A stretch of 64,000 nt of DNA from IMG/VR virus record IMGVR_UViG_3300010158_000027, positions 1 to 64,000 of that record; one strand, written 5' to 3'. Below are positions 36,401 through 58,253 of the stretch, in pieces. Numbering within the stretch: position 1 is the first letter of the stretch; each line of letters begins with the position of its first letter. The position numbers were made by a program, and so were the translations under genes. The notes beneath the pieces were generated by a model. It made no database searches, was not told the origin of the DNA, and saw only the letters and a list, made by a program, of their open reading frames with translations.

Positions 36401-38692
36401 GGAACTGGTGGTTTGTCAACAACAACACTTCAACAAGCGTATGATAATTCAACAACCCCAGAAATAACTACCAACGCAACGTTAGGTGGTTTATCGATAA
36501 AAAATGGTACTGGAAATGCCGATAACGTAACAAATTTAATAGAAGGTTTAAATGCCGCTGGTAACACAACATCATTTATTAGAGCTGATGGTGATATTTC
36601 TGGTACAACAATACAAACAAATGGTTTTACAGCAAATACTGGTGGAATGACAGCCACAACAGTTTCTGCCACAACAATTAATACTAATGGTGTTACCGCA
36701 ACAACAATTAATACAGGGGGGTTTAGTGCTAACGGAAATGGTTTAACCGCAACAACAATATCAGCAACAACATTACAAACGGGTGGGTTTTCCGCTAACA
36801 CTACAGGACTATCAGCATCAACTGTTAATATAAGAACAATCGGTAGTGGGTCCTCAGTTACCAACTTAGGTGTCGATTCTTCGGGTAATGTTGTCAGTGG
36901 TAGTACCCCTTCAATACCACAAGCTAATAAAATTTATGTTGATTCAATTAATGGGACTAATTCAACAGGTCAAGGAAATATTAACGCACCATACTTAACA
37001 GTAGAATACGCATTATCAGACATAACTAATACGGGAACGGTTACCGCAACCACTGCGAATGGTAGTGCGACATTAACATCCGTAAGTTCTACGGCTAATA
37101 TTGTTATAGGACAATTTATTACTGGTACTGGCATCCCATATAATTCAGTGGTTGTTAGTAAGACACCCAACACAATTGTATTAAGTCAATTATGTACAGC
37201 ATCAGCCACTATTACTGCAACTTGGTGGACTATTTATGAACTTATTCTGAACGGTAATTTTGTATGGGTTTCTAATTGGTTTAAACAAGGTTTTTTTATA
37301 AATGCTCAAACTTCAACTATATCATTCTCAGGAGTATTGTTATCACCAACTAGTCCTGTAGTACCAATAGTATTTAAAGGTGGTTTTTTATACGGAACAT
37401 CCGCATCAAGTAAATTTTTATCTATAAATGGGAGTTCAGTTGTAAAAGTATTTTTAAATCCAACAACTTATTCGAGTAGTGGTACTGGATATCAAATAGA
37501 TTGTAATCAAAATGGTAGTTCAAAATTTGATTCATTATATTTATTATGTGATAGTTTCTTAGCGAATTTTGGGTCAATTGCGGATATTGAAAGTGGTGGA
37601 GTATCTACCATAAAGGGTAATTATTATGGACTTTTGAGTGGTATTAGACTAAGATTCGCTACTATATTTTTTGATGGTGATTTAATTTGTCCAACTTCGG
37701 TTGCAGCATTTACGTCCGTAACTAGCGGTTATTTATTCACTAACGGTAGAATAACGGGAAATCTTTCAATACAAAGTAGTGGTGGTGTAGTTAATAGTAC
37801 CGTTACGGGTACTGCTCACTCATTGGGTTCAATTAGTACGGATTTGTTACAAACATTTAATGGTAAAATATTAGGAACTGTATCTGTACAAGGAATTTGC
37901 ACATTTAATGGAGTTGTTTATGGTAATATAACGGTGGTTGGTGGAACATCAATTTTTTTGGGTGTTTCAACTACAGTTGCAACTGTTACAACTAGCATAT
38001 CTGTTTCTAACGCAAAAGTGATAGCAACGGGTATGGCATCGATAGTTTCAGGAATTAATGGTATTGGGAATATAACTCTAACAAATTCAGCAACTTTAGA
38101 TATATTAGATAATGTAATAGGGGTTTCATACACCACTTATTCATCTGTACCCTTTATTTCTGTGGACGCAACATCAACATTAAATTTATATAAAACTAAT
38201 TTTGGAAACATATCTAGTTGTGCGGGAACGATTAACGTGTATGGTATATTTTCACATATTAATAAATCCGCAGACATAACGGGGTCATTAAACAATAAAG
38301 GTGGGACAATACAATTATTAAGATCTACCACAGAATCTGCAACTAGCACACCAACATTATTAATCTCTGGAGGTACATACCAACAAAACGGTGGTAAATT
38401 GTTATGTGCGGTATCAGATTCTAAATCGGGATTATTAAGAAAAACGGCAACGGGAGGTAAAATACAATTAATTAATCAGGCATATTTAAAGGTCGCAAAT
38501 GGGTTAGCTCCAATACAAATAATATCAAATACGGGGACAGCTCAAGATGTTGAAGTTTATTCGGTAATCGATAATTGTGCGGTTGGATTTAGAATTTCAA
38601 ACACATTTACCGATACAACATATGGAACAGCATATTCTCCAAATATTTTAGTGGGGGGTACGATGTTAGAAGATACAACTTATTTATTATAA
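30449..38692 (+). CDS. Giant adhesin/tail fibre with YadA-head-like 14-aa SHAEG repeats and a beta-helical C-terminus
   Basis: About 50 SHAEG-type repeats in six blocks; Gly/Ser/Thr-rich beta-strand C-terminal half. Confidence 0.8.
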   Translation: MEIKIYGEDSPLSGGTRYVTAISAETGFFDSFTITDIQSGSSVASLFITESGSVISGETNNFTGDTYWTSGTTGTTSIKAINSTGLDSTGNRSVAWGNQTLALGDDSTAWGYLTTAGWKGFTVSSVVAGLITISDNVDYSTEFTSGTVLLDSTQYTYNTVTFSSPNFTIQLNDTTVNTGTYVSDLSNLNSPLATVTVGNGAHSAGDSTKSLGNYSHAEGQNTLASGDYSHAEGYYAISSGDYSHAEGSGTIASGSYSHAEGDNTVAIGNNSHAEGTSTTASGKSSHAEGNTTTAVADYSHAEGGNTTASGVYSHAEGNNTTASGISSHAEGDSTTASGDYSHAEGNNTTASGIGSHAEGASTISSGDFSHTEGFQTKTGGNNGYLAISVSAGLVTLDASYGDVSADYPTGNYLYLNDYAYNNSYTTVALIIDSTSFNGTETEILLIDTSITTTTAVVGNINLNPANWTGDQVYGAPNSHAEGDNTLASGYASHAEGVSAIAAGGNSHAEGNFAIAIGGYSHAEGTNTKSTGDGSHAEGITTQSSGLYSHAEGQDTLTIGQYSHAEGNLTTAGWRAFTVTSVVAGLITISDNVDYTAAFTSGEVLLDTRVYTYNTIAFTSPDFTIQLDDTTVNSGTYVADFSNLNSPLASYIAGTGAHSTGNGTKALGDFSETGGDITLASGYGSHAEGSSTQATGDASHSEGVNTRAEGPHAHSEGYLTRASGDAAHAEGKTSIAHGYYSHAEGQQTTAYGQSSHAEGNSTTASGSYSHAEGAGTETRGNAAHAEGSSTIAIGDYSHTEGNTTQSGWRGFGVSSVVAGLITINDDIDYSAEFPGSDVLLDNIIYSYNSISFSSPSFTIQLDDITINTGTYVADLTNLTSTAYLATTLGAYSHAEGENTLASGPASHAEGESTSATSDYSHAEGFNTLASGSYSHAEGGGTTASGEYSHAEGGGTTASGGASHAEGQATQASGQSSHAEGESTTASGDYSHAEGAGTVASGYAAHAEGDGTISSGNYSHSEGDGTISSGNYSHAEGTSTIAGWRAFTVTSVVSGLITISDNVDYSSVFNSNIVILDNNEYGYNTIAFSSPNFTIQLNDTNVNTGTYVADFLNLNSPLATTTLGNGTHSAGDGTKAFGNYSHAEGTGTVSYGVSSHSEGYGSYTYGDYSHSEGYASSTYGNQSHAEGGSTATFGNYSHAEGYGTQSGWRAFPVSSVVAGLITISNNVDYTSQFTLGGGKVILDNNLYTYNTISYSAPNFTIQLDNITVSTGSYVADYTNLSSSWATIVLGTASHSEGTGNISTGDYSHAEGQGTTSIGQSSHSEGFLTKSIGIASHSEGYSTTSIGSYSHSAGYNAIASGNTSFIHSTNSVVGGDRSVVLGGQNITGLTNDTVYVPYFNLNYTPIFSNSNTEILSRNSSNGDVEYTPLSAFTSLDTYVTGYTYSPTTNTFTIKQNQGQPNISASFDSVSGLTVNGLLEANSMSANTFSATSIDKVDYIIFNTGTTSAATVAGMVYFDNTEKSLSYNTSINQGVTVNLGQQNYIRVFNNSGVDIQRGKALEVLSAYSGLPSVTLAVNKHTGFNIIGVSSEIIPNNTEGIAITNGIISDIQLTGITVGSLVYASDTVPGKLDDVTNYLNFPLTARTNSVGYVVQTGITTGKLFVNINNENSVLSLTDLERNVLEGNTLSTGLFGFTGMTTGSTTTFNVAPLKGWLIKNTYEYATLPDVQSVNYTGGTNISVTNIASADSTFILINSAITITQQTTFPTPQQRRENIYLGKINHPNRTSILNINNTADYDVSPMSSLRDLWSPIRLINQGIVPSPNGANLSFNTSAGILWGNGINWHNNQLSPNNVSIAAKVPVSFNYRTQTGGTSTSVTVIDPRNYDVGGVITSIGNAGLDDATNQRIYMYPTGVINVLYGQTVYTNLTAAVAAVQSESFIPYPNADSSGILIGVLSVRNDIGTDGQSLTNTSYAKFTFVSKFGESFGGTGGLSTTTLQQAYDNSTTPEITTNATLGGLSIKNGTGNADNVTNLIEGLNAAGNTTSFIRADGDISGTTIQTNGFTANTGGMTATTVSATTINTNGVTATTINTGGFSANGNGLTATTISATTLQTGGFSANTTGLSASTVNIRTIGSGSSVTNLGVDSSGNVVSGSTPSIPQANKIYVDSINGTNSTGQGNINAPYLTVEYALSDITNTGTVTATTANGSATLTSVSSTANIVIGQFITGTGIPYNSVVVSKTPNTIVLSQLCTASATITATWWTIYELILNGNFVWVSNWFKQGFFINAQTSTISFSGVLLSPTSPVVPIVFKGGFLYGTSASSKFLSINGSSVVKVFLNPTTYSSSGTGYQIDCNQNGSSKFDSLYLLCDSFLANFGSIADIESGGVSTIKGNYYGLLSGIRLRFATIFFDGDLICPTSVAAFTSVTSGYLFTNGRITGNLSIQSSGGVVNSTVTGTAHSLGSISTDLLQTFNGKILGTVSVQGICTFNGVVYGNITVVGGTSIFLGVSTTVATVTTSISVSNAKVIATGMASIVSGINGIGNITLTNSATLDILDNVIGVSYTTYSSVPFISVDATSTLNLYKTNFGNISSCAGTINVYGIFSHINKSADITGSLNNKGGTIQLLRSTTESATSTPTLLISGGTYQQNGGKLLCAVSDSKSGLLRKTATGGKIQLINQAYLKVANGLAPIQIISNTGTAQDVEVYSVIDNCAVGFRISNTFTDTTYGTAYSPNILVGGTMLEDTTYLL

Positions 38693-40722: not shown

Positions 40723-43122
40723 ATGTCGAATAAAAGAATTTCACAGTTACCATATATAGGTGCAGATAAAATTTCGGGCAATACCTTAGTCCCTTTAGTC
40801 ACTTACTATTCAGCGACTACAGGAACTACCGTACACTCAAATCTCGGTGATGTACAATCGTTTATACTAAGCGGACAGACATTAACGGGAGGAACGTATA
40901 ACTCAACATCGGGTAATCTTACGTTAGTTAATAATAGTGGTGGAACCATAATAATTTCAGGAATAACTTCATCAGCGGGTACTAGTGGGACATCTGGTAC
41001 GTCAGGTATTAATGGTATAAATGGTACTAGCGGTATTGACGGCACTAGTGGAATATCAGGAACTAGCGGTATTGACGGAACTTCAGGGTTAAGCGGAACT
41101 AGCGGTATTGACGGAACTTCAGGGTTAAGCGGAACTAGTGGTATCGATGGAACGTCAGGTGTAAACGGTACTAGCGGCACATCAGGAACGAGCGGTATTG
41201 ATGGGACTTCAGGTGTAAGTGGAACTAGCGGAAGTAGTGGTACGTCGGGAATTAACGGAACTAGCGGGGTAAGTGGTACATCAGGTATTAACGGAACGTC
41301 AGGAACGAGTGGAATAAATGGTACTAGTGGTATTAACGGCACTAGTGGAGAGTCGGGATCATCAGGGACTAGCGGAATAAACGGTAGTTCAGGTACGTCA
41401 GGTACAAGTGGAATAATTTATATTACAAATCAAACCACAGGTTCGGTGACGTATTACACAACATTGGAACTTGCGAGAGATGGATCTGTTTCTGGAGATA
41501 CTATATATGTAAATACTGGAACATATATAGTAACTACAACCGCAGCTAACGGATTAAGTAAAAGTGGAGTGAATTGGTATTTTCAACCAGGTACGGTAGT
41601 GTCTAAAGTAACATCAGGTCACATATTTAGTGATAATGGTTTTGCTCTTAATGCGAATGTGTATGGAAATGGAACTTTTACTAAATCAACAACCACAGGT
41701 AATATATTTTATAATACATTATCAAACGCAATATTTGAAGCAAAATCAGTTACATCAAGTATAGATGATTGTTTTTTAACAACAACAGCTTCAAATTTAT
41801 ATTTCAATGTTAAATTTGCCGTATCAAGTGGTGGTAGAGTTTTACATATAGCCGGTTATTCAACAAGTCTTATAAAAATTGATATGATATCTTGGAGATC
41901 CACAGCGTCTAATTGTATCGGAGGAACTACCTGGTGGTATAATACTGATGTTCAAGTAACTGGGGAATTATTAGAATCTACAACGGCACAAGCTGTGGGT
42001 AATTATAATAGTGGAGCCGTATTAAATTTAAATATTACAAAAATACTTGGAGTAACTTATGCTTTATCTTCAGGTGATGGAAGTAATGGATATCCAAATA
42101 TTATAAATTGTGCTTATTGTACAGGTATATCAGATATTGGTAAAAATTATATCCTTAATGGTCAATTTGGGGTATTAAATTATGTTGGTAGTAATGGTGC
42201 CTTTGTTAATGGTGGAAGATTTGCAACAATTACTTTAACAGGTGGTGGACATGTAATTACAACTCTTGGGGCTAATTTTACACTACCTTCTACTGGTACA
42301 ATAACACAAAGTTCTGGGGTATTAGACGTAACTATTGATACTTTTCATTATGGTATTGGATTTACCATAACAGGAGGTGTTTGTAATATTAGGAATCAAT
42401 CAGTATCAAACCAATTATCAGGAGCTTTAGATAGAATAGTAAATGGTGGAACATTAAACTTATATACTAATTTTATTCATGGTGGAAATCCTGATTCTGG
42501 AGTATGGTATGCGATGAAATTACAATCAGGAACATTAAGACTATTAGCTTCAGTACAAAATAACTTTAATGTTGCATCAAGTAATTTAGCGGCACACGGA
42601 ATAGTATGGGTTGGTGGTAAATTAATTATTGATAGATCAACTATTTTTATAACAGATACCGTTGCATTACCGATACAAGCAACAACCGCTGGTTTATCTT
42701 TAAGAGTTCTTACAGGTGGATTAAGCACAAATATTACGGCGGATGGGGGAGTATTACCAGGTAAAAAAATGAAATATAAATTTACCATAAGCGCAGTTGC
42801 AGCAACAGGAATAAATATTTTAATACCAACCTCTTATAACATTTCAGAATCAAACACTGGGGTGTATAATACTAAAGCTCTTTTAGCTCAACGAATGGCT
42901 TCATTAATTAATGGTAGTCCATTTTTAAATGTTGCGGTAATTGCTACACAAGACATACCAGGAACTGATGAATACTTTTATATAGAAACATTAACCGCGG
43001 GCCCCACATTTTCATATAATACTCCTGTTAATTTTTCAGCTATTAATATTCAAAGATGGAATAGTTATACTATAACGAACATAACTGGAGGATCAATTTT
43101 AGAAAACTCAAACGTAGAATAA
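40723..43122 (+). CDS. Fibre protein with GTS collagen-like stalk and beta-helix-like C-terminal domain
   Basis: [10 protein letters not shown] start; GTS block; [11 protein letters not shown] beta-helix cap motif. Confidence 0.75.
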
Positions 43123-43123
43123 G

Positions 43124-43459
43124 ATGGAATTACAAAACATAGTAGTAGACTTTAAAGAAATCACAACAACCACAATGTATAAAGACGTACATTATGATGT
43201 GGATGTTATGTCGGAGATTGAACCCGTTAAAATTGAGTTTGAGATTGCTTATGGTATCACATTCGATAGAGCAATAATACAATTAACTGAGGATCAACAT
43301 TTATGTGAACCAAGAATACTTTGTCAAAAAGAAGATGAACAAACGATTATAACTATTGTAGATATAAGAGATAATCATCCATCACTTATGTTGGAATTAG
43401 ATAAAATAAAATTATTAATTGAAGAACAATTACTTAATAATACGAATAATGGCGATTAG
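43124..43459 (+). CDS. Small acidic protein after fibre (chaperone candidate)
   Basis: Position and size only. Confidence 0.6.
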
Positions 43460-45338
43460 AGATAAGATAATAAGTGGGGGTAATGGTATAAATTTTACTA
43501 AGGAGACGGATTCTAGTACTGACTGGACTGGAATTACCAATAACACATATTTTAGAGATGTTGCGGACGGATTAATACATTATAAAAATTCGTCTGGATC
43601 AATATTAGAAATATATAATCTAAGTACTTCGGGGACTAGTGGAACATCAGGTACTTCCGGAATAAATGGTATTAACGGAACGTCAGGAACGAGTGGTGTA
43701 AATGGTTTAAACGGAACTAGCGGAACATCGGGTATAAATGGGACGTCTGGAACAAGCGGTATAAATGGGACGTCAGGAATCAACGGTACAATCGGTTTAA
43801 GTGGAACATCAGGAACAAGTGGTACCAATGGGTTAAACGGCACATCTGGAACGAGCGGATCATCAGGGACTAGTGGAATTAATGGAACATCAGGTACTAG
43901 CGGTAGAAATGGGACATCTGGTATAGATGGAACGTCTGGTACGTCAGGTAGAAATGGTACTTCAGGGACTAGCGGGATATCACCAACAGTATCAGGGTCT
44001 AATGACCAAATACTGACTTCAAATGGTGCTGGTGGAATTATTGCCGAATCTCTTTTAACATTTGACGGTACAAAATTAAGCGTATTGTATCAAGCCGGTG
44101 ATGAAGGTGGTGAAATATTATTAAATAAACCTGAAACCAACACTACCATTTCAGGTACAGGGGTTACTTTTGATGTATGGCAAAATAGAATTAGGTTTTT
44201 TGAACAAGGTGGAACGGCAAGAGGTGCGTATATTGATATAACTGAATGTGCTGCCGGTGTCGGTACAAACCTTTTAACTGGTGGGTCAACTTCATCAGGA
44301 ACCAGTGGCACATCGGGTAGAAATGGTACATCTGGTATTAACGGAACTAGCGGGACATCCGGAACAAGTGGTGTTAATGGTAGTAGTGGAACTAGTGGAG
44401 TTAATGGTACTTCAGGAATAAACGGCACTAGTGGTACGTCAGGTAGAAATGGAACATCAGGAATTGATGGTACGTCGGGTACAAGTGGTATTAACGGTAC
44501 ATCAGGAACTAGTGGTGTTAACGGCACATCTGGTACTTCAGGAATCAATGGACAAAATGGAACATCTGGAACATCTGGAACATCTGGAACTTCAGGAACG
44601 AGCGGTATAGCACTTATATTAAATAATACCAACAATTACGTTTTAACCGCGACAGGTACTTCAGGGGTTATAAATGGTGAATCTAACTTAACTTTTGATG
44701 GTACAACTGCAATTATAACAGGAAATCTAAATGTATCCGGAGGTACACAATCTATCTTCTCTGGAAATAGTACTTTAGAGTTAGTTAAGATAATTCAAAC
44801 GGGAACAGGGGATGCACTTGTTGTTGAGGATTCATCAAATGGTGACACTTCACATTTCGTTATCGACGCTAGTGGTAATACGTCAATAGGAACATCTACA
44901 ACGGGAAGAAAGTTAACAGTGTCTGGAGATTCAACATTCATTCATAATCCATTAACTCTTTTAACCGCATCAGTTACCGCATATGGGGATATAGTAACTT
45001 TTGGTAGTGGGTCATTAACTGCGGGTAGTTTATATTACCTAGGTAGTGGAGGATCATGGACAGCTGCAGATGCCAGTTCAAGTACATCATCAACTGGGTT
45101 ATTAGGTATCGCTTTAGGTACAACCGCTTCATCAGGGTTATTAATAAAGGGGTACGCCAGATCCACCACATACTCAGCAACAACAGGTCAGATATTATAC
45201 GTATCAACAACCGCCGGTTCAATCACTCCAACCGCGCCATCAGCCGCTACCGAAATAATTAGAATAATTGGGTATCAGTTATCCACAAATGATGATGTCA
45301 TATACTTTACCCCTTCAAATGATTGGATAGAATTATAA
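43449..45338 (+). CDS. Fibre protein with two GTS collagen-like blocks
   Basis: GTS blocks at about 43623-43980 and 44290-44607. Confidence 0.75.
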
Positions 45339-50848: not shown

Positions 50849-51379
50849 TTAATTGTTAGACATTATTTTACAAAATTCTAACATCTGGTTATGGGTTAAA
50901 TTATTTTTAGCGTGATTACAAGTGATACTAATAAATTGAATATTACCTTTAACATAACCTTTATCACTATCAATCCGATCTAAAGATGCGGTGTTTAAAT
51001 TAGTCCTATCACCATTATGGTTGGGGTGTAATAATTGTATATGACTATAAACACAGATACCATTTTGCTTATTCCATTGATCTAAAATATCGTCCAAAGT
51101 TACACCTATCTCGTGTTTTCTTTTTTTTAGTCTACGGTAATGTTCTCTTAATCCTGTGTAGTTGTCCTTTCTATTATTAGACATACCCAATAAGAATTTT
51201 ACATTCCCTTCAACATATTTAAGTAAATGTTTATTATTTATTTTACCACTACACGTTAATGAACAATAGTTTTTTCTACCAATCTTTTCATTTCGATTAA
51301 TCTCTGATTTGTCCTTAAGAAATGTTATATTACATTCAGGGTTGGAGCAAATTGTTAGTTCTTTTTTTCTTTTTTCCAT
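50849..51379 (-). CDS. Free-standing HNH-like (His-Me finger) endonuclease
   Basis: N-terminal CxxxxC...CSLTC zinc finger; CVYS...ASLDRIDSDKGYVKGNIQFISITCNHAKN. Confidence 0.75.
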   Translation of the reverse strand: MEKRKKELTICSNPECNITFLKDKSEINRNEKIGRKNYCSLTCSGKINNKHLLKYVEGNVKFLLGMSNNRKDNYTGLREHYRRLKKRKHEIGVTLDDILDQWNKQNGICVYSHIQLLHPNHNGDRTNLNTASLDRIDSDKGYVKGNIQFISITCNHAKNNLTHNQMLEFCKIMSNN

Positions 51380-51480
51380 AATCCTTTTATTATAAATATA
51401 TACATCTCCACAAAAAACCCATCTCCACAAAAAAATACATAAAAAAATTACCACTATTTCTAATGGTAAATCTTTTGTCT

Positions 51481-51520
51481 TCTAGCGATGTTTATAGTTT
51501 TACTTATAAACACCGCTAGA
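51481..51520 (-). terminator. Hairpin 3' of the tmRNA gene
   Basis: TCTAGCG-A-TGTTTATA...TATAAACA-C-CGCTAGA inverted repeat. Confidence 0.6.
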
Positions 51521-51539
51521 AGGTACAAAAGATCCAGGG

Positions 51540-52156
51540 TGGAGGTGCGGGGACTCGCAAAATCAATAATTTTCATTACTGCGTGGACTATATCATCATC
51601 TCATTGAGATGTCGGACGCTCTAGCTGGTTATTAAGTATATCGCTATACTCCAGTAGTCTCTGCACCTTCTTACTCTGTAAGCTTGGCTCAGGATTGCCA
51701 CCACCATTACGTGCTGAGGTTTCCCTGAGTTCATCCGATTTTTAATCTATTGTCACCAATAGATGGGTCCGACATTAAACCCCGGTCCATAACATCCTGT
51801 AAAACAAGGACTACACGTTTAGGTTAACGTTTTCTAACGTTCCAAAATATTTGATTTTTCACACCGACCAACAAACGGTGATAGTCCTTTCGGGGGACCA
51901 TACCCGTTTTGTTTTCTTTTAGAGTGTAAACTAACTCATCAACGACTTCTGTTGCTAGGTTGAATGTCTGACCGACCCCCGTTTCCGAACTTAAATTAAG
52001 CTACAGTAACTTCAGATTCTCTTACTAAACCAAGAGTTTCCATTTTCGATAATACGTCGCCGATTGTTTTTTGTGAATCAGTTTTTAAAGAGATTAACTC
52101 AGTCTCTACGTGCCCTTTATTCTCAGCCGACATCTGTCAAATCCAAAAACACCCCC
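51540..52156 (-). ncRNA. ssrA: tmRNA, intron-containing (exon 1 52156-51778, exon 2 51557-51540; CCA not encoded)
   Basis: 5' GGGGGTG..GGATTTGAC; 3' CACCTCCA with G3-U; T-arm CGGGG-TT|CGAGT-CCCCG restored on splicing; tag ORF 52061-51996. Confidence 0.92.
51558..51777 (-). mobile_element. ORF-less group I intron (IC3-like, 220 nt) in the tmRNA T-loop
   Basis: P1 GGGUU/GACCC with U-G at the 5' splice site; P3 UCGGAUG/CGUCCGA; P4 CUCAGG/CCUGAG; P7 GACUA/UAGUC; P9 GAAA hairpin; terminal G. Confidence 0.9.
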
Positions 52157-52221: not shown

Positions 52222-53406
52222 ATGTTTAAAAAAAGGTTTATATACGAACAAGAGGAAGAGGAAGTCGAATTAAATGACTTTCAAAAAATCCTAGCACTTC
52301 ATAAAAAAAGAATGCATCCAAATCAGGTTGAGTTTTTTAATTCGGAAGGTAAGGATTTTTCAGATATTATATCAATCAATTACGATGGGATTACCTTCAA
52401 TTTTAATGATTTACAGGAATATTTAGAGTTCTTTTTTCCAGAAATATATGGTGTGGATGGTTCCGATGGGGCCTACGAGGCTGAGTACTTCCAACAGATG
52501 TATAATGGAAATTGGAGCTGGCATAACGAATATTGGGATAGATCTACTGATGATTGGAATGAGGGGTATATTGTTGGAGCAATGAAAAGTCAAAGTTTAG
52601 AGACATTAAAAGAAATTATAGATGCGGTTTCGCCTGGTGATAGTAAATGTATTGTCTTTAAAGATGGGGAGTATGTATTGGATAACTCTAGCGATAAGTC
52701 TAACGCCGAAACAACCATTACGTCAATTTTAGAAGGTTTGGGGGTTGAGGATAAGATAAAGGAAGCATATGTTGATGCTCAAGTGGACGCTGTGAGTGAT
52801 GAAGTCTCTAAATATATTGAAGACACCTATGGTGATTGTTTTTCTGAACTTGGAATTGAAAACGATTCGGCAAGACACTTTTTTTGGAAATATTCAATGG
52901 ATTGGGGTTCTATGGTTTTATTGTTTGCTCGTTTTGGTACTGAAAACGATAGTTTTTTAGACTTACTTTTTGAAGCGATTAACGCCACAGCGATTAAACA
53001 TCTTCCAGAATATTATGAAATGCAATATAACGTTTGGAATGAAGAAAAGTTCACTAAAACATATGTCAATGAACTAAGTACCATTTTTGATAAACTATTA
53101 ATTGAGGTATCTGAAAACCACAATAAAGGGTATTATGAAGCTATTTCAAAGATTACAAAAATCGGTGGGTTTAATACCTGGATAACCTCTAAAAATGAAA
53201 AAGTTAAACTTATGATTAGAAATCTTGATCCCGAAACCCTAAAAGTTGATTTTTCTGTTATCAATGGTAATTATGGTTCTTGGCATTCAAAAAAAGGTAG
53301 ATCTACCGTTGATGAAATAATCAACCTACTCTATAATGAAAGTATGTTTGATGTTGAGGATTTCAGGGAACATTATTTAAGATTTATTCAAAAGACGATT
53401 CTTTAA
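52222..53406 (+). CDS. Acidic hypothetical protein with short leader (MFKKRFIYEQ)
   Basis: ORF; TATTTAT at 52209-52215. Confidence 0.8.
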   Translation: MFKKRFIYEQEEEEVELNDFQKILALHKKRMHPNQVEFFNSEGKDFSDIISINYDGITFNFNDLQEYLEFFFPEIYGVDGSDGAYEAEYFQQMYNGNWSWHNEYWDRSTDDWNEGYIVGAMKSQSLETLKEIIDAVSPGDSKCIVFKDGEYVLDNSSDKSNAETTITSILEGLGVEDKIKEAYVDAQVDAVSDEVSKYIEDTYGDCFSELGIENDSARHFFWKYSMDWGSMVLLFARFGTENDSFLDLLFEAINATAIKHLPEYYEMQYNVWNEEKFTKTYVNELSTIFDKLLIEVSENHNKGYYEAISKITKIGGFNTWITSKNEKVKLMIRNLDPETLKVDFSVINGNYGSWHSKKGRSTVDEIINLLYNESMFDVEDFREHYLRFIQKTIL

Positions 53407-54429
53407 TATATCATAAAGGTAGGGTAAGTCGTCGTCAGAAATAAAAACGGTGCCACCCCCAAAAATATCTGAAATCGTAACTCCACTTTTTTCTTCCATA
53501 ACATCGATTGTTTCTAATTGGTGGAATTCCTCCGATTCAATATAGAAATCATCATCGTCAAATCCAATTAAAGAATTCATAACCGTTTGTTGTGTATATA
53601 CTATGGGTTTATAAACATATTCGTATTTTTTATAACCAAGAACCTTTACCATGTTTTTTCCAGCATCGATTGAGTTTTTAACATCATCAATTGAGATGAA
53701 CTCTTGGTTTGAGTGCATATTATAGTAACCACAAGACATGTTGATACAAGAAACGTCCGATTTCTTTTTTAGTTGCGATATGTCAGTATATGGGTGAGAT
53801 TGAACTAACATTTCATTTCCAAAAGATTCCTCAATCACCTTTAATGTTTTTGTGAAAAATTCACTATCACGATCAAACAATCGAACTCCCGAACATATCT
53901 CGGATATTAAATGGTTCCCTGGCGCATCGTATTGGGCGATGTAACCAACATCCTTTAAAAAATTCTCATCACATTTTGACGATCCGTGACAACCCGTCTC
54001 TTCTGAAACAAAAAGTCCAATTTTTACCTTATCTAATTGTTTTAAAAGTTCCAAACAAATAAAAATACCACATTTATCATCACCACCAATACCCGTTGGG
54101 TTTCCGTCTTCATCGTAAGCTTTCAAACAATCAACCTCACTTTTATCGAAAGTTTTTCCGAACGTATTTGGTCGAGGTAGTTTTTCTTCTTTAACTATAA
54201 TTTTATCAATCATGTTATGAACCGTATCGGTGTGGGCAATAAACATCGGGTAAGACTCATTCTCAGTAAGTGTACCTTTAGTTGCGTATACATTCATCAT
54301 AATATCCCTGTAATATGAGACACCCTCAATCTTGTCCAATTCAGAGCAAATATATTCCACCATATCCTCCTCTTGGTATGTTTTTGATGGTACTGATAAT
54401 AAATCTTTGAATTTCTCTAAATCGAACAT
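53377..54429 (-). CDS. Dinuclear zinc peptidase (M20/M28/M42 clan)
   Basis: AHTDTVH, GGDDKCG, SEETG, YD, NMHSNQE; TATCTTTG at 54446-54453. Confidence 0.85.
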   Translation of the reverse strand: MFDLEKFKDLLSVPSKTYQEEDMVEYICSELDKIEGVSYYRDIMMNVYATKGTLTENESYPMFIAHTDTVHNMIDKIIVKEEKLPRPNTFGKTFDKSEVDCLKAYDEDGNPTGIGGDDKCGIFICLELLKQLDKVKIGLFVSEETGCHGSSKCDENFLKDVGYIAQYDAPGNHLISEICSGVRLFDRDSEFFTKTLKVIEESFGNEMLVQSHPYTDISQLKKKSDVSCINMSCGYYNMHSNQEFISIDDVKNSIDAGKNMVKVLGYKKYEYVYKPIVYTQQTVMNSLIGFDDDDFYIESEEFHQLETIDVMEEKSGVTISDIFGGGTVFISDDDLPYLYDILKNRLLNKS

Positions 54430-54522: not shown

Positions 54523-56745
54523 TCATGGTTTAAGTCTTCTTTTTGTTGGTTTTTTTATCTTTACCTCCGTTTTCTTATCCGTCTCATTATATGAGAGAAT
54601 AAATTTGGATCCCTTTTCTGGGTTATTTGTTAATATGGATTCGGTTATCGCATCATCAACCCACTTTTGTACTGTACGTTTTAATATACGAGCCCCAAAT
54701 CTAGTGTCTGTCCCTACGGTAATTAAATGTTTTTTTAATGTGTCGTCCACCTCAACATCGAACTCAATATTTTTAACTCTCTCAAAAACCTTATTAAGTT
54801 CTAATTCTACGATTTTTAATAAATCATCCTCATTCAAATCTTTAAAATAGATAATCTCATCAAATCTATTAATGAATTCTGGTGCGAACCTTTTAAACAA
54901 TTCCTTTTCAAGTAGAGATTTTACCTCATCGTCTTTCTTTTCGATTTTAGTTGTCGTTGTGAATCCAACTCCCCCACCAAAATCTTGAATAACTTTGGTT
55001 CCAACATTGGATGTCATTAAAATTATACAATTTTTAAAATTGATTTTTCTCCCATGCCCATCCGTTAGATATCCTTCATCTAACATTTGTAAAAATACGT
55101 TAAAAATTTCAGGGTGAGCCTTTTCTATCTCGTCTAAAAGTATTACCGAATATGGGTTATTTTTAATTTTGTTTAAAAATGGTGATCCATCTTCATACCC
55201 AACATACCCTGGTGATGTTCCCGTAAGTTTTGATGTTGACACTTTATCTGAGAATTCACTCATGTCTAATCTAATTAACGAATCTTCGCTATTAAACATA
55301 TGTTTAGCTAATTGTTTGGCTAACTCCGTTTTACCGACACCAGAATTACCAATAAGTAACCCACTAAATATTGGTCGTTTAGGGTCGTTTAGTCCTATCT
55401 TGTTTCTTTGAATTGATCTTGCAATTTTAGCAACCGCATCATCCTGACCAATAACTTTACTACATAAAGTTTCTTTTAATACTCTTAACTGTTCAGTCTC
55501 ATCCGTATTGATTTTACTAATTGGAATTTTTGTCATCAACGAAACAACATCATAAACTACATCTTCAGTGACTTCACGTTTGTTTAAGTTTCTATTTTTT
55601 TCAAACTCCTCTTTTTCTCTCTGTAAATCTAATAGGATTTTTCTTTCCTTATCTCTAAGGTTGGCTGCCTCCTCATATTTTTGGCTATTAATTACTTTTA
55701 TTTTTTCCTCTTTAATATCCTGAGCTAACTTTTTAAGATCCTCAATTATTTCAGGTAATTTAATTTCTACTTGTGATCTCGCCCCAACCTCATCGATTAT
55801 ATCAAATGCCTTATCTGGAAATTCTCTATCAGTGATATATCTATCAGCCAACTCAACACAAAGTTTTAATATTTCGTCGGTGTATCTTACTTTGTGGTGT
55901 TCCTCATACCTATCTTTGGAATTTTGAAGGATTTGTAATGTTTCTTCTTTAGTTGATGGATCCACCATGACTTTTTGGAATCTTCTTTCAAGAGCTCCGT
56001 CCTTTTCAATATTTTTTCTATATTCCTCTAAGGTAGTTGCCCCAATACATTGTAGTTCCCCACGAGATAATGCGGGTTTAAATATATTAGACGCGTCCAT
56101 CGAACCAGATGAATTACCCGCACCTATCATCGTATGTATTTCATCAATAAAAATAATAATATCGGGATTGGCATATAATTCCTCAATTATCACTTTCATC
56201 CTTTCCTCGAATTGTCCTCTATATTTTGTTCCCGCAACTATTGATGTCATGTCTAAAGACACTATCCTTTTGCCGGTTAAGTTTTGGGGACAATCACCCT
56301 CAAATATTTTTTTAGCCAACCCCTCGACTATAGCTGTTTTACCACAATTATGGGATACTACCCCATTGGATATATATTTCCTTTCGTTATCTAAAACCTC
56401 CAAATCGTAGGTGTTGTGAACCCCAATTTCAGATTTTTCAATAACCTCATAAATATTATTGTCCTCACAATATACAAAATCCCCCACGTTAATGGTTTTT
56501 AATTTAACCCAAAACGAATCATTAATATACTCAACAGTTTCGTTGGTTGTATTGACATCAACTTCAACTAAATGATCTTCAGACCCAGACAACCCTAACC
56601 CGTTTGAAAGTTTTATTTCAAAACAGTTTTTATTTTGTTTTTTATATAAATTACCGATTAATTTATATCCAGATGGCGTTTTAACTTTATACGTCCCACC
56701 CTCACTCTCGATTAAATTAAAAAACTCCTCAATTTTGATCTTCAT
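54523..56745 (-). CDS. clpC: IntC (133 aa, 56745-56347) fused to the C-terminal part of a ClpC-like AAA+ unfoldase
   Basis: SEDH, TYDLEV, SHN|CGKT; then IFIDE, UVR-like YEEAANLRDKE, GNSGVGKT, LLDEIEKAH and a VGF loop. Confidence 0.92.
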   Translation of the reverse strand: MKIKIEEFFNLIESEGGTYKVKTPSGYKLIGNLYKKQNKNCFEIKLSNGLGLSGSEDHLVEVDVNTTNETVEYINDSFWVKLKTINVGDFVYCEDNNIYEVIEKSEIGVHNTYDLEVLDNERKYISNGVVSHNCGKTAIVEGLAKKIFEGDCPQNLTGKRIVSLDMTSIVAGTKYRGQFEERMKVIIEELYANPDIIIFIDEIHTMIGAGNSSGSMDASNIFKPALSRGELQCIGATTLEEYRKNIEKDGALERRFQKVMVDPSTKEETLQILQNSKDRYEEHHKVRYTDEILKLCVELADRYITDREFPDKAFDIIDEVGARSQVEIKLPEIIEDLKKLAQDIKEEKIKVINSQKYEEAANLRDKERKILLDLQREKEEFEKNRNLNKREVTEDVVYDVVSLMTKIPISKINTDETEQLRVLKETLCSKVIGQDDAVAKIARSIQRNKIGLNDPKRPIFSGLLIGNSGVGKTELAKQLAKHMFNSEDSLIRLDMSEFSDKVSTSKLTGTSPGYVGYEDGSPFLNKIKNNPYSVILLDEIEKAHPEIFNVFLQMLDEGYLTDGHGRKINFKNCIILMTSNVGTKVIQDFGGGVGFTTTTKIEKKDDEVKSLLEKELFKRFAPEFINRFDEIIYFKDLNEDDLLKIVELELNKVFERVKNIEFDVEVDDTLKKHLITVGTDTRFGARILKRTVQKWVDDAITESILTNNPEKGSKFILSYNETDKKTEVKIKKPTKRRLKP

Positions 56746-57914
56746 AATAACTTTTTATTTTTACAATTAGTTTATTTTCATTTAAATCATATATTAAATT
56801 AATATTATTATCTACACAAAATTTAATTTTATAATCCATTTTTTCTTTATATCCTCCCAAAACCCGATCCAATTTATCCATATTTTTACCATTTAATAAC
56901 CCAAAAAACTCAATGTAAATATCTTCTTTAGGTAAGTAAAAATCACATTTCATATTACTATTGGGGTAGTTAGTCTCATAAACAAAATTTAAGTTATTTT
57001 TTTCTAAAAATAAAGCCACCCGATACTCACCCACACTTTTATATCTTATACCGTTATGGTAAGTTGGTATTCCATAATATTGTCTATTTTGGTTTAAGTT
57101 AATTTTACTATAAATAGTATTTTTTAATTCTTTACTTGTTGATTGATAAAAATTCTGTATTATTTTACTACTAATATACGGGGATAAATCCGAATATCTT
57201 TTAATGTCATCTTTAGATAATACACAATCAATAAAATCATTAATATTTTTATTTGTGGTACAATGTGTAACAATATTATTAATTTTTTCTTTAAACCCAG
57301 AATGCTTTAAAATGTCTGATTGACTTTTTTCATTATATTTAAACCCACTTTTACTTCTTTGTATTTCGGAATAATTCGATTTGTTTTTTAAACTCTCAAT
57401 CCACTTATTTTGCCTTTCGTCAAACACTACCCTCCCTTTATCCTTACCGTACTTTTCTATACATTTTTCCAAACTAAATGTGCTCTGCCTTTGTTTAATT
57501 TGGTTTTTAGACTCCTCAATAGAATACCCCTTTTTAATCCAATACTCAACGTTGGTTGTTGTCTTATCTTTATAATGTTCTGGATTATCTTTTTTTAAAT
57601 CGGATAATTTTTTACTGTTTTGTTTTTGTTTTTTAACAATAAAATTTTTAATGTCTTCATCCCCCCCAACCCATACACTTTAAAAATTTTTTATCATATA
57701 TAGTATCGGGGTATTTTAAAATGGATTTAATTGTGGGTTTAACTTGTTTGTAATTTACAAAATCCGTTTTTTCGATAAAATCTTGAATTTCTTTTTTATG
57801 CGAAACATCAAACTTTATAAAGTACTTATAAAATCCACCATTAACTATAAAGTTTTCAAAATCTTCTATAGTTAAAACCTCAAATATCGGTTTACTTCTT
57901 TTTTTAATTAACAT
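56729..57914 (-). pseudogene. Homing-endonuclease-like gene (PD-(D/E)XK/Vsr-like), frameshifted at a G7 run (57661-57667)
   Basis: The 85-aa ORF joins a frame that stays open to 56729 if one G is removed (394 aa); KSVGEYRV...CDFYLPKEDIYIEFFG. Confidence 0.7.
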
Positions 57915-57959
57915 AACACTATACAGGATGTGGGAAATACCACACCCTGACTATAAATA

Positions 57960-58253
57960 TCACATAGTTTCAATATTGTGAGTATTCACATCTGAAATTT
58001 TTTCTACCTCAATCCAAGTATCCCCTAAAACACATCCAGGTTCCCCTAAGATGATTGGGTTATTTTTTTTTCTTCTCGAAAGTATTTGGGCGATTCTATT
58101 AATCTCATCTTCTCTACCGACAACTGGGTCTAATTTACCTTCTTCTGCTAATTTTATTAAATCTCTTGAAAAATTATCTAACACAGGTGTTTTCGTTGAT
58201 CCTTCTTGGTTTTTATTTTTTGATTTGTCACTTCCGTCTGCAGATTCGATCAT
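57960..58253 (-). CDS. clpC: N-terminal ClpC extein (73 aa) plus IntN (24 aa, 58034-57963)
   Basis: [10 protein letters not shown]...[11 protein letters not shown]...[14 protein letters not shown]|[10 protein letters not shown]...stop. Confidence 0.92.

What the first reader, a model, noticed from the sequence alone, without database searches (positions are those of the whole stretch)
54523..58253. Fractured clpC: atypically split intein (24-aa IntN, 133-aa IntC) inside the Walker A P-loop
Seen: one ORF ends ...[34 protein letters not shown]-stop (58253-57960). A second ORF 1.2 kb downstream starts MKIKIEEFF and carries the intein motifs SEDH (TxxH position), TYDLEV and SHN, followed directly by CGKTAIVEGLA. 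Removing both intein parts rebuilds GEPG-CGKT, the first Walker A of a 680-aa ClpC-like unfoldase that lacks the N-domain but has a UVR-like motif and a VGF loop. The halves read as one mini-intein broken at a shared Met (ETM|MKIK), with an endonuclease-like gene in the gap overlapping the IntC start by 17 nt. Known: fractured phage genes with split inteins and an intervening endonuclease exist, as do atypical split inteins with very short IntN (AceL-TerL type, about 25 aa); the hosts I recall are replication and packaging enzymes. Inference: ClpC is assembled by protein trans-splicing. I know of no Clp/Hsp100 host for a split intein, and a 24-aa IntN with Cys+1 is short enough for synthesis and so useful for protein labelling.
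Basis: partly seen in the sequence, partly recalled or inferred. Interest (0 to 1): 0.92.

Follow-up and report, generated by a model that had tools for sequence, protein, structure and literature searches.

The report
Split intein in a phage clpC
A jumbo-phage gene for a ClpC-type protein unfoldase is cut in two inside its ATP-binding loop by a mobile split intein (halves of 24 and 133 residues) with a broken homing-endonuclease gene in between. It is a real, probably self-splicing element, but it is a new member of the known VidaL-type "atypically split" inteins, not a new kind of thing.

Summary
On the minus strand, a 97-aa ORF carries ClpC residues 1-73 plus a 24-aa IntN. A 740-aa ORF carries a 133-aa IntC plus ClpC residues 74-680. 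Together they flank a 1,688-nt insert (56347-58034) in Walker A of the D1 module.

- **Intein identity:** IntC folds as a Hint domain (pLDDT 95.7). Its best structural match is the VidaL intein (TM 0.83), and a family profile hits VidaL at E 4e-26.
- **Empty site:** Near-identical phage contigs lack the insert and encode a colinear 680-aa ClpC. It matches the window's exteins at 73/73 and 601/607 residues and reads GEPGCGKT.
- **Conservation:** Twenty viral contigs carry the same split. Some have an intact ~392-aa endonuclease gene, one a remnant, and some only an 11-40-nt spacer. Both intein halves and both exteins are under purifying selection.
- **Mobility:** The element is patchy on the extein tree, with at least 5 gains or losses.
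- **Endonuclease:** The window's copy is frameshifted at a G7 run.

The "shared Met" is only a start codon. The arrangement is common in public metagenomes. I found no published Clp/Hsp100 host. Trans-splicing is inferred, not shown. Verdict: new member of a known kind, moderate interest.

The parts
58035..58253 (-). N-extein: ClpC-like residues 1-73, ending ...[14 protein letters not shown] (first half of the D1 Walker A)
   Evidence: ORF. Matches phrog_4871 positions 159-223 and ClpB/ClpA/ClpK NCBIfam models. It is 73/73 identical to the N-terminus of the intein-free 680-aa protein P0207.
57963..58034 (-). IntN, 24 aa (Cys1 ... NIETM); stop codon at 57960-57962
   Evidence: [quoted passage not shown] A 24-aa IntN with Cys1 is conserved in L008-L025 and in the distant L003; L021 has 26 aa. 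Net charge is -4.
57911..57965 (-). Stem-loop spanning the IntN stop, the 45-nt spacer (57915-57959) and the endonuclease start codon
   Evidence: RNA fold gives -21.5 kcal/mol, z = -4.2, with 0 of 200 shuffles as good. A stem at the same place in L008, L010 and L025 is kept despite base changes. Dassa et al. 2009 describe hairpins in the 5' UTRs of such endonuclease genes.
57657..57914 (-). 5' piece of the free-standing homing-endonuclease-like gene (85-aa ORF, ends at a frameshift-induced stop)
   Evidence: It aligns with residues 1-83 of the single ~392-aa ORFs of L008, L010, L022 and L025. This exact 85-aa product is recorded on 5 contigs.
57661..57667 (-). G7 homopolymer carrying a +1-nt insertion that breaks the endonuclease reading frame
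   Evidence: DNA alignment with L008 and L025 shows one extra base here. Frames are read.
56729..57679 (-). 3' piece of the endonuclease-like gene (open frame of 317 codons, stop at 56729-56731). It holds a repeated EYW.KGYS / CIEKYG module and a C-terminal CDFYLP...IYIEFFG core
   Evidence: 94% identical to L008. The C-terminal domain matches phrog_4538, of unknown function. The central module is 51% identical (E 2e-18) to P0188, and the core motif aligns inside P0188's DUF559/Vsr-like domain. No Pfam or PDB sequence hit of its own.
56347..56745 (-). IntC, 133 aa (helix α1, block B His58, block F Asp114, block G Ser131-His132-Asn133)
   Evidence: AF2 with alignment gives pLDDT 95.7. Foldseek top hit is VidaL 6vgv (TM 0.83, rmsd 1.8 Å), and all 50 listed matches are inteins or bacterial intein-like (BIL) domains, i.e. 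Hint folds. Profile vs PDB hits VidaL at E 4e-26. TIGR01443 scores above its cut-off. Invariant residues are listed.
54526..56346 (-). C-extein: ClpC-like residues 74-680, starting Cys+1-GKT (rest of Walker A), then D1, UVR-like linker, D2, VGF loop and D2-small; stop at 54523-54525
   Evidence: Pfam AAA, AAA_lid_9, AAA_2 and ClpB_D2-small. phrog_4871 positions 225-760. 601/607 identical to P0207.
56347..58034 (-). The whole inserted mobile element (IntN + spacer + endonuclease gene + IntC), 1,688 nt
   Evidence: blastn of the empty-site contig L107 against the window: L107 3810-4223 matches window 58444-58031 (99.0%) and L107 4220-8506 matches window 56346-52074 (96.2%). The boundary is ambiguous only by the shared TGTG. 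The joined flanks translate to the same 20 residues as six empty alleles.

Best explanation
The window comes from a ~281-kb uncultured jumbo phage. It carries a clpC-like AAA+ unfoldase gene 'fractured' by a mobile element, namely a class-1, Cys1/Cys+1, VidaL-type atypically split mini-intein with a free-standing homing-endonuclease gene between the halves.

Two polypeptides are made. One is a 97-aa N-precursor (ClpC 1-73 plus a 24-aa IntN). The other is a 740-aa C-precursor (a 133-aa IntC plus ClpC 74-680).

IntN supplies strands β1-β2, and IntC supplies helix α1 and blocks B, F and G. On docking they complete a Hint fold. The standard splicing chemistry would then follow:
1. N-S acyl shift at Cys1.
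2. Trans-thioesterification to Cys+1.
3. Asn133 cyclisation.
4. S-N shift.

This would join Gly73 to Cys74 and create the D1 Walker A GEPGCGKT of a 680-aa ClpC-like protein. D1 could bind ATP only after splicing.

At the DNA level the element spreads, or once spread, by endonuclease-driven homing into empty GEPG|CGKT alleles. In this genome the endonuclease gene is inactivated by a +1 frameshift, so the copy is probably stranded.

Shown here: the anatomy, the fold, the homology, the empty site, the selection and the patchy distribution. Inferred: that the two halves actually associate and splice, and that the endonuclease cuts the empty site.
For: 1. **Exact junction.** The ClpC profile resumes one position after it stops. 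Joined flanks give [10 protein letters not shown]|CGKTAIVEGL, identical to six empty alleles.
2. **Empty-site genomes.** P0207 is a 680-aa protein, colinear with the exteins at 73/73 and 601/607 identity. Its contig L107 is syntenic and 96-99% identical on both sides of a clean 1,688-nt insertion. Of the 80 closest viral relatives, 70 are uninterrupted with GEPGCGKT and 9 carry IntC.
3. **Hint fold.** AF2 gives pLDDT 95.7. Foldseek hits VidaL at TM 0.83, then gp41-1, GyrA and DnaB inteins.
4. **Sequence homology.** IntC profile vs VidaL gives E 4e-26. The clpC IntC of L004 vs VidaL gives E 3e-16. TIGR01443 is above its cut-off, and TIGR01445 aligns to IntC only from model position 16, as expected if block A lies on IntN.
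5. **Both halves belong to one intein.** The contiguous intein of P0028 matches IntN (E 7e-8) and IntC (38% identity, E 6e-26) in order.
6. **Catalytic residues.** Cys1, His58, Asp114, His132-Asn133 and the +1 nucleophile (Cys, or Thr in L003) are kept in all split clpC loci read.
7. **Purifying selection.** Between split alleles, synonymous sites are near saturation (pS 0.37-0.81) while pN is 0.016-0.30 in IntN, IntC and both exteins.
8. **The split is stable without the endonuclease.** L009, L014, L019, L015-18 and L021 keep stop, an 11-40-nt spacer and ATG at the same point.
9. **Mobility.** At least 5-6 gains or losses on the C-extein tree, against a mean of 12.8 for shuffled labels (0 of 500 as low). 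Intein and extein identities disagree: L010 has IntC 81% vs C-extein 60%, while L009 has 77% vs 88.6%.
10. **Matches the published pattern.** Same strand, a 45-nt spacer (Dassa: 27-51), a hairpin before the endonuclease gene, and overlap with IntC.
Against: - There is no experiment. Association and splicing of these halves are inferred.
- Pfam's Hint/intein models do not detect IntC.
- The 24-aa IntN alone finds nothing in the PDB.
- The block B Thr position holds Ser (GSEDH).
- Selection is measured across the family, not on this particular copy. Its flanks are so close to empty alleles that the insertion could be recent and, in principle, dead.
- The endonuclease is broken here, and its nuclease family is not established.
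- No contiguous-intein clpC allele was found among the roughly 185 clpC-type loci read.
Confidence: 0.82

Rival explanations
1. Dead insertion. The element landed recently in this phage lineage and the halves no longer splice, or never did in this context. clpC would then be a pseudogene in two pieces that has not yet decayed.
For: The flanks are 96-99% identical to empty-site genomes and the exteins are 99% identical to P0207, so there has been little time for decay. The element's own endonuclease gene is already frameshifted. ClpC is an accessory phage gene.
Against: All catalytic residues are intact. IntC is 95% identical to L008's and IntN is identical. Lineages with the same split have diverged to synonymous saturation while keeping full-length exteins and low pN. 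That is not expected if the split killed the gene.
Confidence: 0.1
2. Non-covalent assembly. The intein halves act only as a dimerisation device, so the 73-aa N piece and the C piece work as a two-chain ClpC without peptide-bond formation. This would resemble the endonuclease-derived interaction domains that assemble a split NrdA (PMC3045599).
For: Such a precedent exists (listed). Intein halves bind tightly.
Against: A folded 157-residue intein would sit inside the Walker A loop between Gly and Cys-Gly-Lys-Thr, which is hard to reconcile with nucleotide binding. The nucleophiles, His-Asn and the block B His are conserved, and they are needed only for chemistry, not for binding.
Confidence: 0.05
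3. The break is not at the protein level. Possible causes are a misassembly, a group I intron carrying the endonuclease gene, or translational bypass of the short spacer.
For: The window does hold a group I intron elsewhere (51564-51816), so such elements are present in this genome. Homopolymer errors occur in assemblies.
Against: No intron model matches the gap. The only hit is a sub-threshold snoRNA match on the hairpin. The same stop, gap and ATG architecture is found in 20 viral contigs from many samples. The exact 97-aa and 740-aa products are on 17 and 3 contigs. Alleles without the endonuclease have only 11-40 nt between stop and ATG, too short for an intron, and some have two stops.
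Confidence: 0.03

Closest known systems
VidaL intein (PDB 6vgv/6vgw), a naturally atypically split, Cys-dependent intein with a 16-aa IntN
   Same: It is the best structural match (TM 0.83, rmsd 1.8 Å) and the best sequence match (E 4e-26 for the profile). The split lies before helix α1. It shares the long IntC and the block G ...GIVSH-N. The deposited chain continues with SGK, so it too appears to sit at G|xGK of a P-loop.
   Different: Only 22% identity. IntN here is 24 aa, with an extra ~8-residue tail (...[10 protein letters not shown]). Here +1 is Cys and the host is ClpC. I could not establish VidaL's native host from the papers held.
Fractured genes of Dassa et al. 2009 (gp41-1, gp41-8, NrdJ-1, IMPDH-1, NrdA-2, GOS-TerL; PMC2677866)
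   Same: The layout is the same: an enzyme gene, IntN, a short spacer (45 nt here; 27-51 in the paper), a free-standing endonuclease gene with a 5' hairpin, then IntC overlapping its end, all on one strand. It is phage-borne, and alleles without the endonuclease exist, as with gp41-7.
   Different: All eight hosts in the paper are DNA synthesis, repair or packaging enzymes, with no chaperone or unfoldase. Most of those inteins are split canonically (IntN 88-105 aa). Only the terminase case has a long IntC (122 aa).
AceL-TerL / GOS-TerL / Cat (consensus) atypically split inteins
   Same: Short IntN (25-37 aa), long IntC, Cys1. CatC is a weak sequence hit (E 1.4e-3) and a Foldseek hit.
   Different: Those are split after helix α1 (S2 site, PMC13014065) and sit in terminase large subunits at a different motif. 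In this window α1 belongs to IntC.
PolB16 OarG intein (15-aa IntN, Ser1/Ser+1; PMC10189870)
   Same: Atypical S1-type split, from a metagenomic phage-like source.
   Different: It is cysteine-less, its host is a PolB polymerase, its IntC is 168 aa, and its block B His is dispensable. No detectable sequence relation was seen here.
'Classic' P-loop inteins (DnaB-b, MCM-a, RFC-a, TerL1-a; PMC4760082, PMC5050341)
   Same: Insertion in the Walker A loop of an oligomeric ATPase, so activity depends on splicing.
   Different: Those are contiguous inteins. The classic site is between the Lys and Thr/Ser of GK|T. Here the site is two residues earlier, at GxxG|xGKT.
ClpC/ClpA-type class I Hsp100 unfoldases, including phage-encoded ones (phrog_4871; jumbo-phage ClpA/ClpX noted in PMC7824862)
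   Same: Two AAA+ modules, AAA_lid_9, D2-small, a short coiled-coil/UVR-like linker and a VGF tripeptide where ClpP-docking loops lie.
   Different: No Clp_N domain, because the N-extein is only 73 aa. Walker A has Cys, not the Val seen in the megaphage homologues L001 and L002 (GEPGVGKS). No partner ClpP was identified in the window.

Membership tests
Intein (Hint domain, class 1 splicing) | Nucleophile (Cys/Ser/Thr) as first intein residue | tested here: met
   Cys1 directly follows GEPG. It is conserved in every split clpC locus read.
Intein (Hint domain, class 1 splicing) | Block B TxxH motif | tested here: met
   GSEDH. His58 is invariant in 23 family members. The Thr position holds Ser, a conservative departure. 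TIGR01445 aligns over this region but below its cut-off (15.8 vs 24.5 bits).
Intein (Hint domain, class 1 splicing) | Block F/G with terminal His-Asn followed by a +1 Cys/Ser/Thr | tested here: met
   TYDLEV ... VVSHN|C. Asp114, Ser131, His132 and Asn133 are invariant. TIGR01443 intein_Cterm scores 21.6 bits against a cut-off of 15.6.
Intein (Hint domain, class 1 splicing) | Hint (horseshoe) fold | tested here: met
   AF2 pLDDT 95.7, pTM 0.85. All 50 listed Foldseek matches are inteins or bacterial intein-like (BIL) domains, with VidaL best. Only IntC was modelled, because the halves could not be joined for the tools.
Intein (Hint domain, class 1 splicing) | Removal restores an intact, conserved host protein | tested here: met
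   The 680-aa intein-free proteins are colinear with the two exteins at 99% identity. The DNA empty site is shown.
Intein (Hint domain, class 1 splicing) | Autocatalytic protein splicing | not testable with these tools
   Needs expression and mass spectrometry.
Naturally split intein, atypical (short IntN) | Two halves on separate ORFs, IntN under ~40 aa and IntC over 100 aa | tested here: met
   24 aa and 133 aa, separated by a stop codon and 1,214 nt. The same split is seen in 20 viral contigs, some with only 11-40 nt between the halves.
Naturally split intein, atypical (short IntN) | Split site class: S1 (after β2, VidaL/PolB16) versus S2 (after α1, AceL/GOS-TerL) | tested here: met
   S1. 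The IntC model starts with a helix at residues 5-15, followed by the strands. IntC residue ~2-5 aligns to VidaL chain residue ~22-25. Site definitions are from PMC13014065.
Naturally split intein, atypical (short IntN) | Trans-splicing of the separately made halves | not testable with these tools
   Inferred from purifying selection on both halves.
Fractured gene (Dassa et al. 2009) | Host gene, IntN, endonuclease gene and IntC-host all on one strand at one locus | tested here: met
.
Fractured gene (Dassa et al. 2009) | The intervening gene is a homing endonuclease (GIY-YIG or Vsr-like) | tested here: inconclusive
   No Pfam, NCBIfam or PDB hit. It shares a central module with proteins that end in DUF559/MTES_1575 (Vsr-like) domains, and the core CDFYLP..IYIEFFG aligns inside that domain at pairwise E 0.015. 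Presence/absence polymorphism fits a mobile endonuclease gene. In this window the gene is frameshifted.
ClpC (class I Hsp100, ClpP-coupled) | Two AAA+ modules with AAA_lid_9 and D2-small | tested here: met
   Pfam AAA 2.3e-20, AAA_lid_9 7e-27, AAA_2 1.4e-54, ClpB_D2-small 1.4e-15.
ClpC (class I Hsp100, ClpP-coupled) | N-terminal Clp_N repeat domain | tested here: not met
   The N-extein is 73 aa with no Clp_N hit. The distant relative L003 does have Clp_N. 'ClpC-like' is therefore a description, not an orthology call.
ClpC (class I Hsp100, ClpP-coupled) | UVR-type short middle domain and ClpP-docking (I/L/V)G(F/L) loop | tested here: inconclusive
   UVR scores E 0.015, 15.4 bits against a cut-off of 21.5. 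A VGF tripeptide is present in D2. Binding to ClpP is untested and no clpP gene was seen in the window.

The most novel reading that the evidence does not exclude
The window's element may be one branch of a single VidaL-like lineage of atypically split inteins. This lineage would have hopped, with changing endonuclease partners, into the same G|xGK(S/T) position of at least seven unrelated P-loop NTPase families: ClpC D1, Clp D2, classic AAA, PhoH, clamp loader, and SF1 and SF2 helicases.

It would carry its own +1 nucleophile codon into the host. L010 has Cys+1, whereas its nearest empty alleles have Ala.

The lineage would also include natural IntN pieces as short as 13 residues (the clpC locus L004). 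If active, that would be shorter than the 15-16 aa of any characterised natural IntN.
Probability: 0.35. Interest if true: 0.6.

Novelty: new member of a known kind. Interest (0 to 1): 0.45.

Why it matters
- **New host class.** It adds a protein-quality-control unfoldase (Clp/Hsp100 class) to the hosts of split inteins. In the papers I could search, those hosts are replication, repair, nucleotide-metabolism and packaging enzymes.
- **A natural series of alleles.** One phage population holds empty sites (99% identical flanks), the element with an intact endonuclease, with a frameshifted one, with a remnant, and split halves with no endonuclease at all. This could be used to study how endonuclease invasion breaks an intein and how split inteins persist, which is the gene-breaking model of Dassa et al.
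- **Protein engineering.** It offers a set of diverged VidaL-type Cys1/Cys+1 pairs with 24-aa IntN, and a 13-aa relative, as candidates for semisynthetic labelling and as possibly orthogonal pairs.
- **What it does not change.** It does not alter the understanding of how inteins work.

Tried and rejected
- **Pfam Hint/intein models:** no match on IntC.
- **Single-sequence AlphaFold of IntC:** useless, pLDDT 43. The alignment-based run worked.
- **phmmer of the 24-aa IntN against PDB:** no hits. A natural contiguous relative (P0028) served instead.
- **Endonuclease identification:** Pfam, NCBIfam, PDB by single sequence and PDB by two profiles all failed. Only PHROG 4538, of unknown function, matched, plus an indirect link to DUF559/Vsr-like proteins.
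- **First IntC profile:** the A1 profile took in extein columns, so AAA ATPases topped the PDB list. The VidaL hit is still unambiguous.
- **Group I intron or other RNA in the gap:** none.
- **Other copies of the intein family in the window:** none.
- **Contiguous-intein clpC allele:** none found in about 185 loci.
- **Literature:** Burton et al. 2020 is not held. A search for VidaL's host name gave nothing. No supplements are held for Novikova et al..
- **'AceL-TerL type':** considered and rejected on split-site grounds.
- **Host gene of the nearby group I intron:** not found.

Full report
**What is in the sequence**

On the minus strand there are four ORFs in a row.
- **57960-58253 (97 aa):** the start of a Clp/Hsp100 ATPase up to ...[14 protein letters not shown], followed by 24 residues beginning with Cys and then a stop.
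- **57657-57914 (85 aa).**
- **56729-57472 (247 aa by the ORF lister):** the frame is in fact open back to 57679.
- **54523-56745 (740 aa):** it begins MKIKIEEFF. It carries GSEDH, TYDLEV and VVSHN, and continues with CGKTAIVEGLA and the rest of a two-module Clp ATPase.

Pfam finds AAA, AAA_lid_9, AAA_2 and ClpB_D2-small in the 740-aa product. It finds a weak UVR motif and no Clp_N. The PHROG family of phage ClpC-like ATPases matches the 97-aa product at profile positions 159-223 and the 740-aa product at 225-760.

**Is the intervening protein an intein?**

Pfam's Hint models miss it. Other evidence is clear.
- NCBIfam's intein C-terminal model scores above its curated cut-off at residues 112-134. 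The N-terminal intein model aligns to IntC only from model position 16 onward, as expected if block A lies on the other fragment.
- phmmer against PDB sequences finds CatC, VidaL and gp41-1 weakly.
- A search of 1.84 billion representative proteins returned 100 relatives. In most, the IntC-like stretch lies at the very N-terminus. In at least 50 it is followed by (C/T/S)GK(S/T).
- A profile from 23 family members hits the VidaL split intein at E 4e-26.
- With that alignment AlphaFold gives a confident model (pLDDT 95.7). Its best Foldseek match is VidaL (TM 0.83, rmsd 1.8 Å), and all 50 listed matches are inteins or bacterial intein-like (BIL) domains.
- His58, Asp114, Ser131, His132 and Asn133 are invariant in the family.

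**Do the two halves belong together?**

A naturally contiguous relative, P0028, serves instead. It is an intein in another P-loop protein, GLPG|C...HN|TSKT. It matches the end of the window's N fragment, including IntN (14/27 identical, E 7e-8). Some 27 residues further on it matches IntC (38% identity, E 6e-26).

IntN has net charge -4, and the first 40 residues of IntC have net charge +4. The IntC model begins with helix α1, so the split lies before α1. This is the S1 position of VidaL and PolB16, not the S2 position of AceL-TerL and GOS-TerL (definitions in PMC13014065).

**Empty sites**

- Two megaphage genomes hold uninterrupted homologues with GEPGVGKS.
- Of the 80 closest IMG/VR relatives of the C-extein (81-100% identity), 70 are uninterrupted with GEPGCGKT and 9 carry IntC.
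- The 90%-identity cluster of the window's own 740-aa product contains 680-aa proteins. These are colinear with the two exteins at 73/73 and up to 601/607 identity.
- One such contig, L107, is syntenic with the window. It has the same M42-like peptidase, 394-aa gene and glycosyltransferase. It aligns at 99.0% up to window 58031 and resumes at 56346 at 96.2%.

The insert is therefore exactly 56347-58034, or 1,688 nt. Its removal predicts precisely the protein that sister genomes encode.

**Other occupied alleles**

Twenty IMG/VR contigs carry an IntC 60-100% identical to the window's. One of them, a 281-kb UViG, is the window's source. All have the same split point and a 24-aa IntN, except L021 with 26 aa. 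They fall into three states:
- a ~1.2-kb gap with one ~392-aa ORF (L008, L010-13, L022-26);
- a 360-nt remnant (L020);
- only 11-40 nt between stop and ATG (L009, L014-19, L021).

More distant fractured clpC genes exist as well.
- L003 has a 24-aa IntN, Thr+1, a Clp_N domain on the N fragment, and a DUF723 gene on the opposite strand in the gap.
- L004 has a 13-aa IntN and a NUMOD3/TnsA-like endonuclease gene, with clpS downstream.
- P0048 shows the same intein type in the D2 Walker A of a Clp protein.

**Selection and mobility**

Between split alleles, synonymous differences are near saturation (pS 0.37-0.81). Non-synonymous differences are 0.016-0.30 in IntN, IntC and both exteins. This is the main argument that the halves work. 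An inactive intein in Walker A would kill D1 and release all four parts from constraint.

On a C-extein tree of 82 alleles the split state needs 6 changes, of which at least 5 are forced by well-supported branches. The window's allele is sister to an empty one at 99% support. Intein and extein similarities disagree: L010 has IntC 81% against C-extein 60%, while L009 has 77% against 88.6%. Both patterns indicate horizontal movement.

Around L010, the nearest empty alleles have Ala at the +1 position. Others have Cys or Ser. The +1 Cys therefore travels with the intein or is selected with it.

**The gene in the gap**

In L008, L010, L022 and L025 the 85-aa ORF and the downstream frame are one ORF. 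The window has one extra base in a G7 run (57661-57667) relative to L008 and L025. The truncated 85-aa product is recorded on 5 contigs, so the frameshift is probably real.

The protein has no Pfam, NCBIfam or PDB match. Its central module is shared with proteins that end in DUF559/MTES_1575 (Vsr-like) nuclease domains. Its C-terminal core aligns weakly within that domain. I therefore call it a homing-endonuclease-like gene, probably of the Vsr-like superfamily that Dassa et al. found in half of their fractured loci. That assignment is inconclusive.

A stable hairpin covers the IntN stop, the 45-nt spacer and the endonuclease start codon (-21.5 kcal/mol, z = -4.2). It recurs in relatives despite base changes.

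**Rivals**

- **RNA-level or assembly explanations:** the many independent contigs, the short-spacer alleles and the lack of any intron model in the gap argue against these.
- **A recently inserted, dead copy:** this cannot be excluded for this particular genome, but it runs against the intact catalytic residues and the family-wide selection.
- **Non-covalent assembly without splicing:** this does not explain conservation of the nucleophiles and His-Asn.

**Comparison with what is known**

Fractured genes with split inteins and free-standing endonucleases were described in 2009 for gp41, IMPDH, DnaE, NrdA, NrdJ, ligase and terminase. Atypically split natural inteins known to the 2023-2026 papers I read are AceL-TerL, GOS-TerL, VidaL and PolB16. 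P-loop insertion of contiguous inteins is common, with the classic site at GK|T.

The present case combines these known features in a new host and at G|xGKT. The VidaL crystal chain also continues with SGK after its mutated terminal Asn, so VidaL probably belongs to the same P-loop-targeting family. Full-text searches for split inteins with ClpC, or inteins with Clp and P-loop, returned nothing relevant beyond the chloroplast ClpP intein.

**Verdict**

This is a genuine VidaL-type atypically split intein in a fractured phage clpC. It very likely splices in trans, and it is mobile in a natural phage population, although its endonuclease is already broken in this genome. It is a new member of a known kind. 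Interest is moderate (0.45). It is valuable mainly as a natural series for split-intein evolution and as a source of new short-IntN pairs.

Noticed in passing
window 50849-51816 (-): A complete group I intron (Rfam RF00028, 92.7 bits, E 1.6e-22) lies at 51564-51816. It is followed by a 201-aa ORF (50849-51454) with an HNH-like motif. The syntenic empty-site contig L107 lacks about 900 nt here, so this too is a presence/absence mobile element. I could not identify the gene it interrupts. There is no tRNA and no clear ORF.
   Followed up: partly
window 57911-57965 (-): A stem-loop pairs the IntN stop region with the endonuclease start codon. Relatives keep a stem at this position despite base changes. 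It may gate endonuclease translation, as proposed for other phage homing endonuclease genes.
   Followed up: partly
L004:1-3656 (JGI contig Ga0371475_1069677): A distant fractured clpC has an IntN of only 13 residues (CITENTIIKVRKL, then two stops). That is shorter than the 15-16 aa of characterised natural IntN fragments. A NUMOD3/TnsA-like endonuclease gene lies in the gap, clpS lies downstream, and an RNR gene with a contiguous intein is on the same contig.
   Followed up: partly
L110-L189 and L027-L106 (Walker A position 5 of clpC): Intein-free alleles are polymorphic at the residue that is +1 in occupied alleles. It is Cys in all 70 close relatives of the window. It is Ala (27), Cys (48) or Ser (3) around L010, and Val in the megaphages. 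The intein-bearing L010 has Cys while its nearest empty relatives have Ala.
   Followed up: partly
P0048, P0004, P0007, P0008, P0009, P0022, P0040 (representative proteins): The same IntC family precedes the xGK(S/T) of Clp D2, classic AAA, PhoH, clamp-loader, and SF1 and SF2 helicase proteins. P0007 also holds a second, contiguous LAGLIDADG intein. P0014, P0035 and P0037 look like endonuclease-IntC fusions or merged gene calls.
   Followed up: partly
window 27907-30447, 40723-43122, 43419-45338 (+); 30449-38692 (+): Three collagen-like tail-fibre genes account for the G+C-rich, G-skewed block at 28-30 kb. Next to them lies a 2,747-aa repeat protein of unknown function.
   Followed up: no
window 53377-54429 (-): An M42-family aminopeptidase-like gene lies directly downstream of clpC on the same strand. 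It is conserved in that position in L107-L109. It is a possible functional partner of the unfoldase.
   Followed up: no
L003:3267-4187 (-): In this distant fractured clpC the gap gene is a DUF723 protein encoded on the opposite strand. This departs from the same-strand rule of fractured genes.
   Followed up: no
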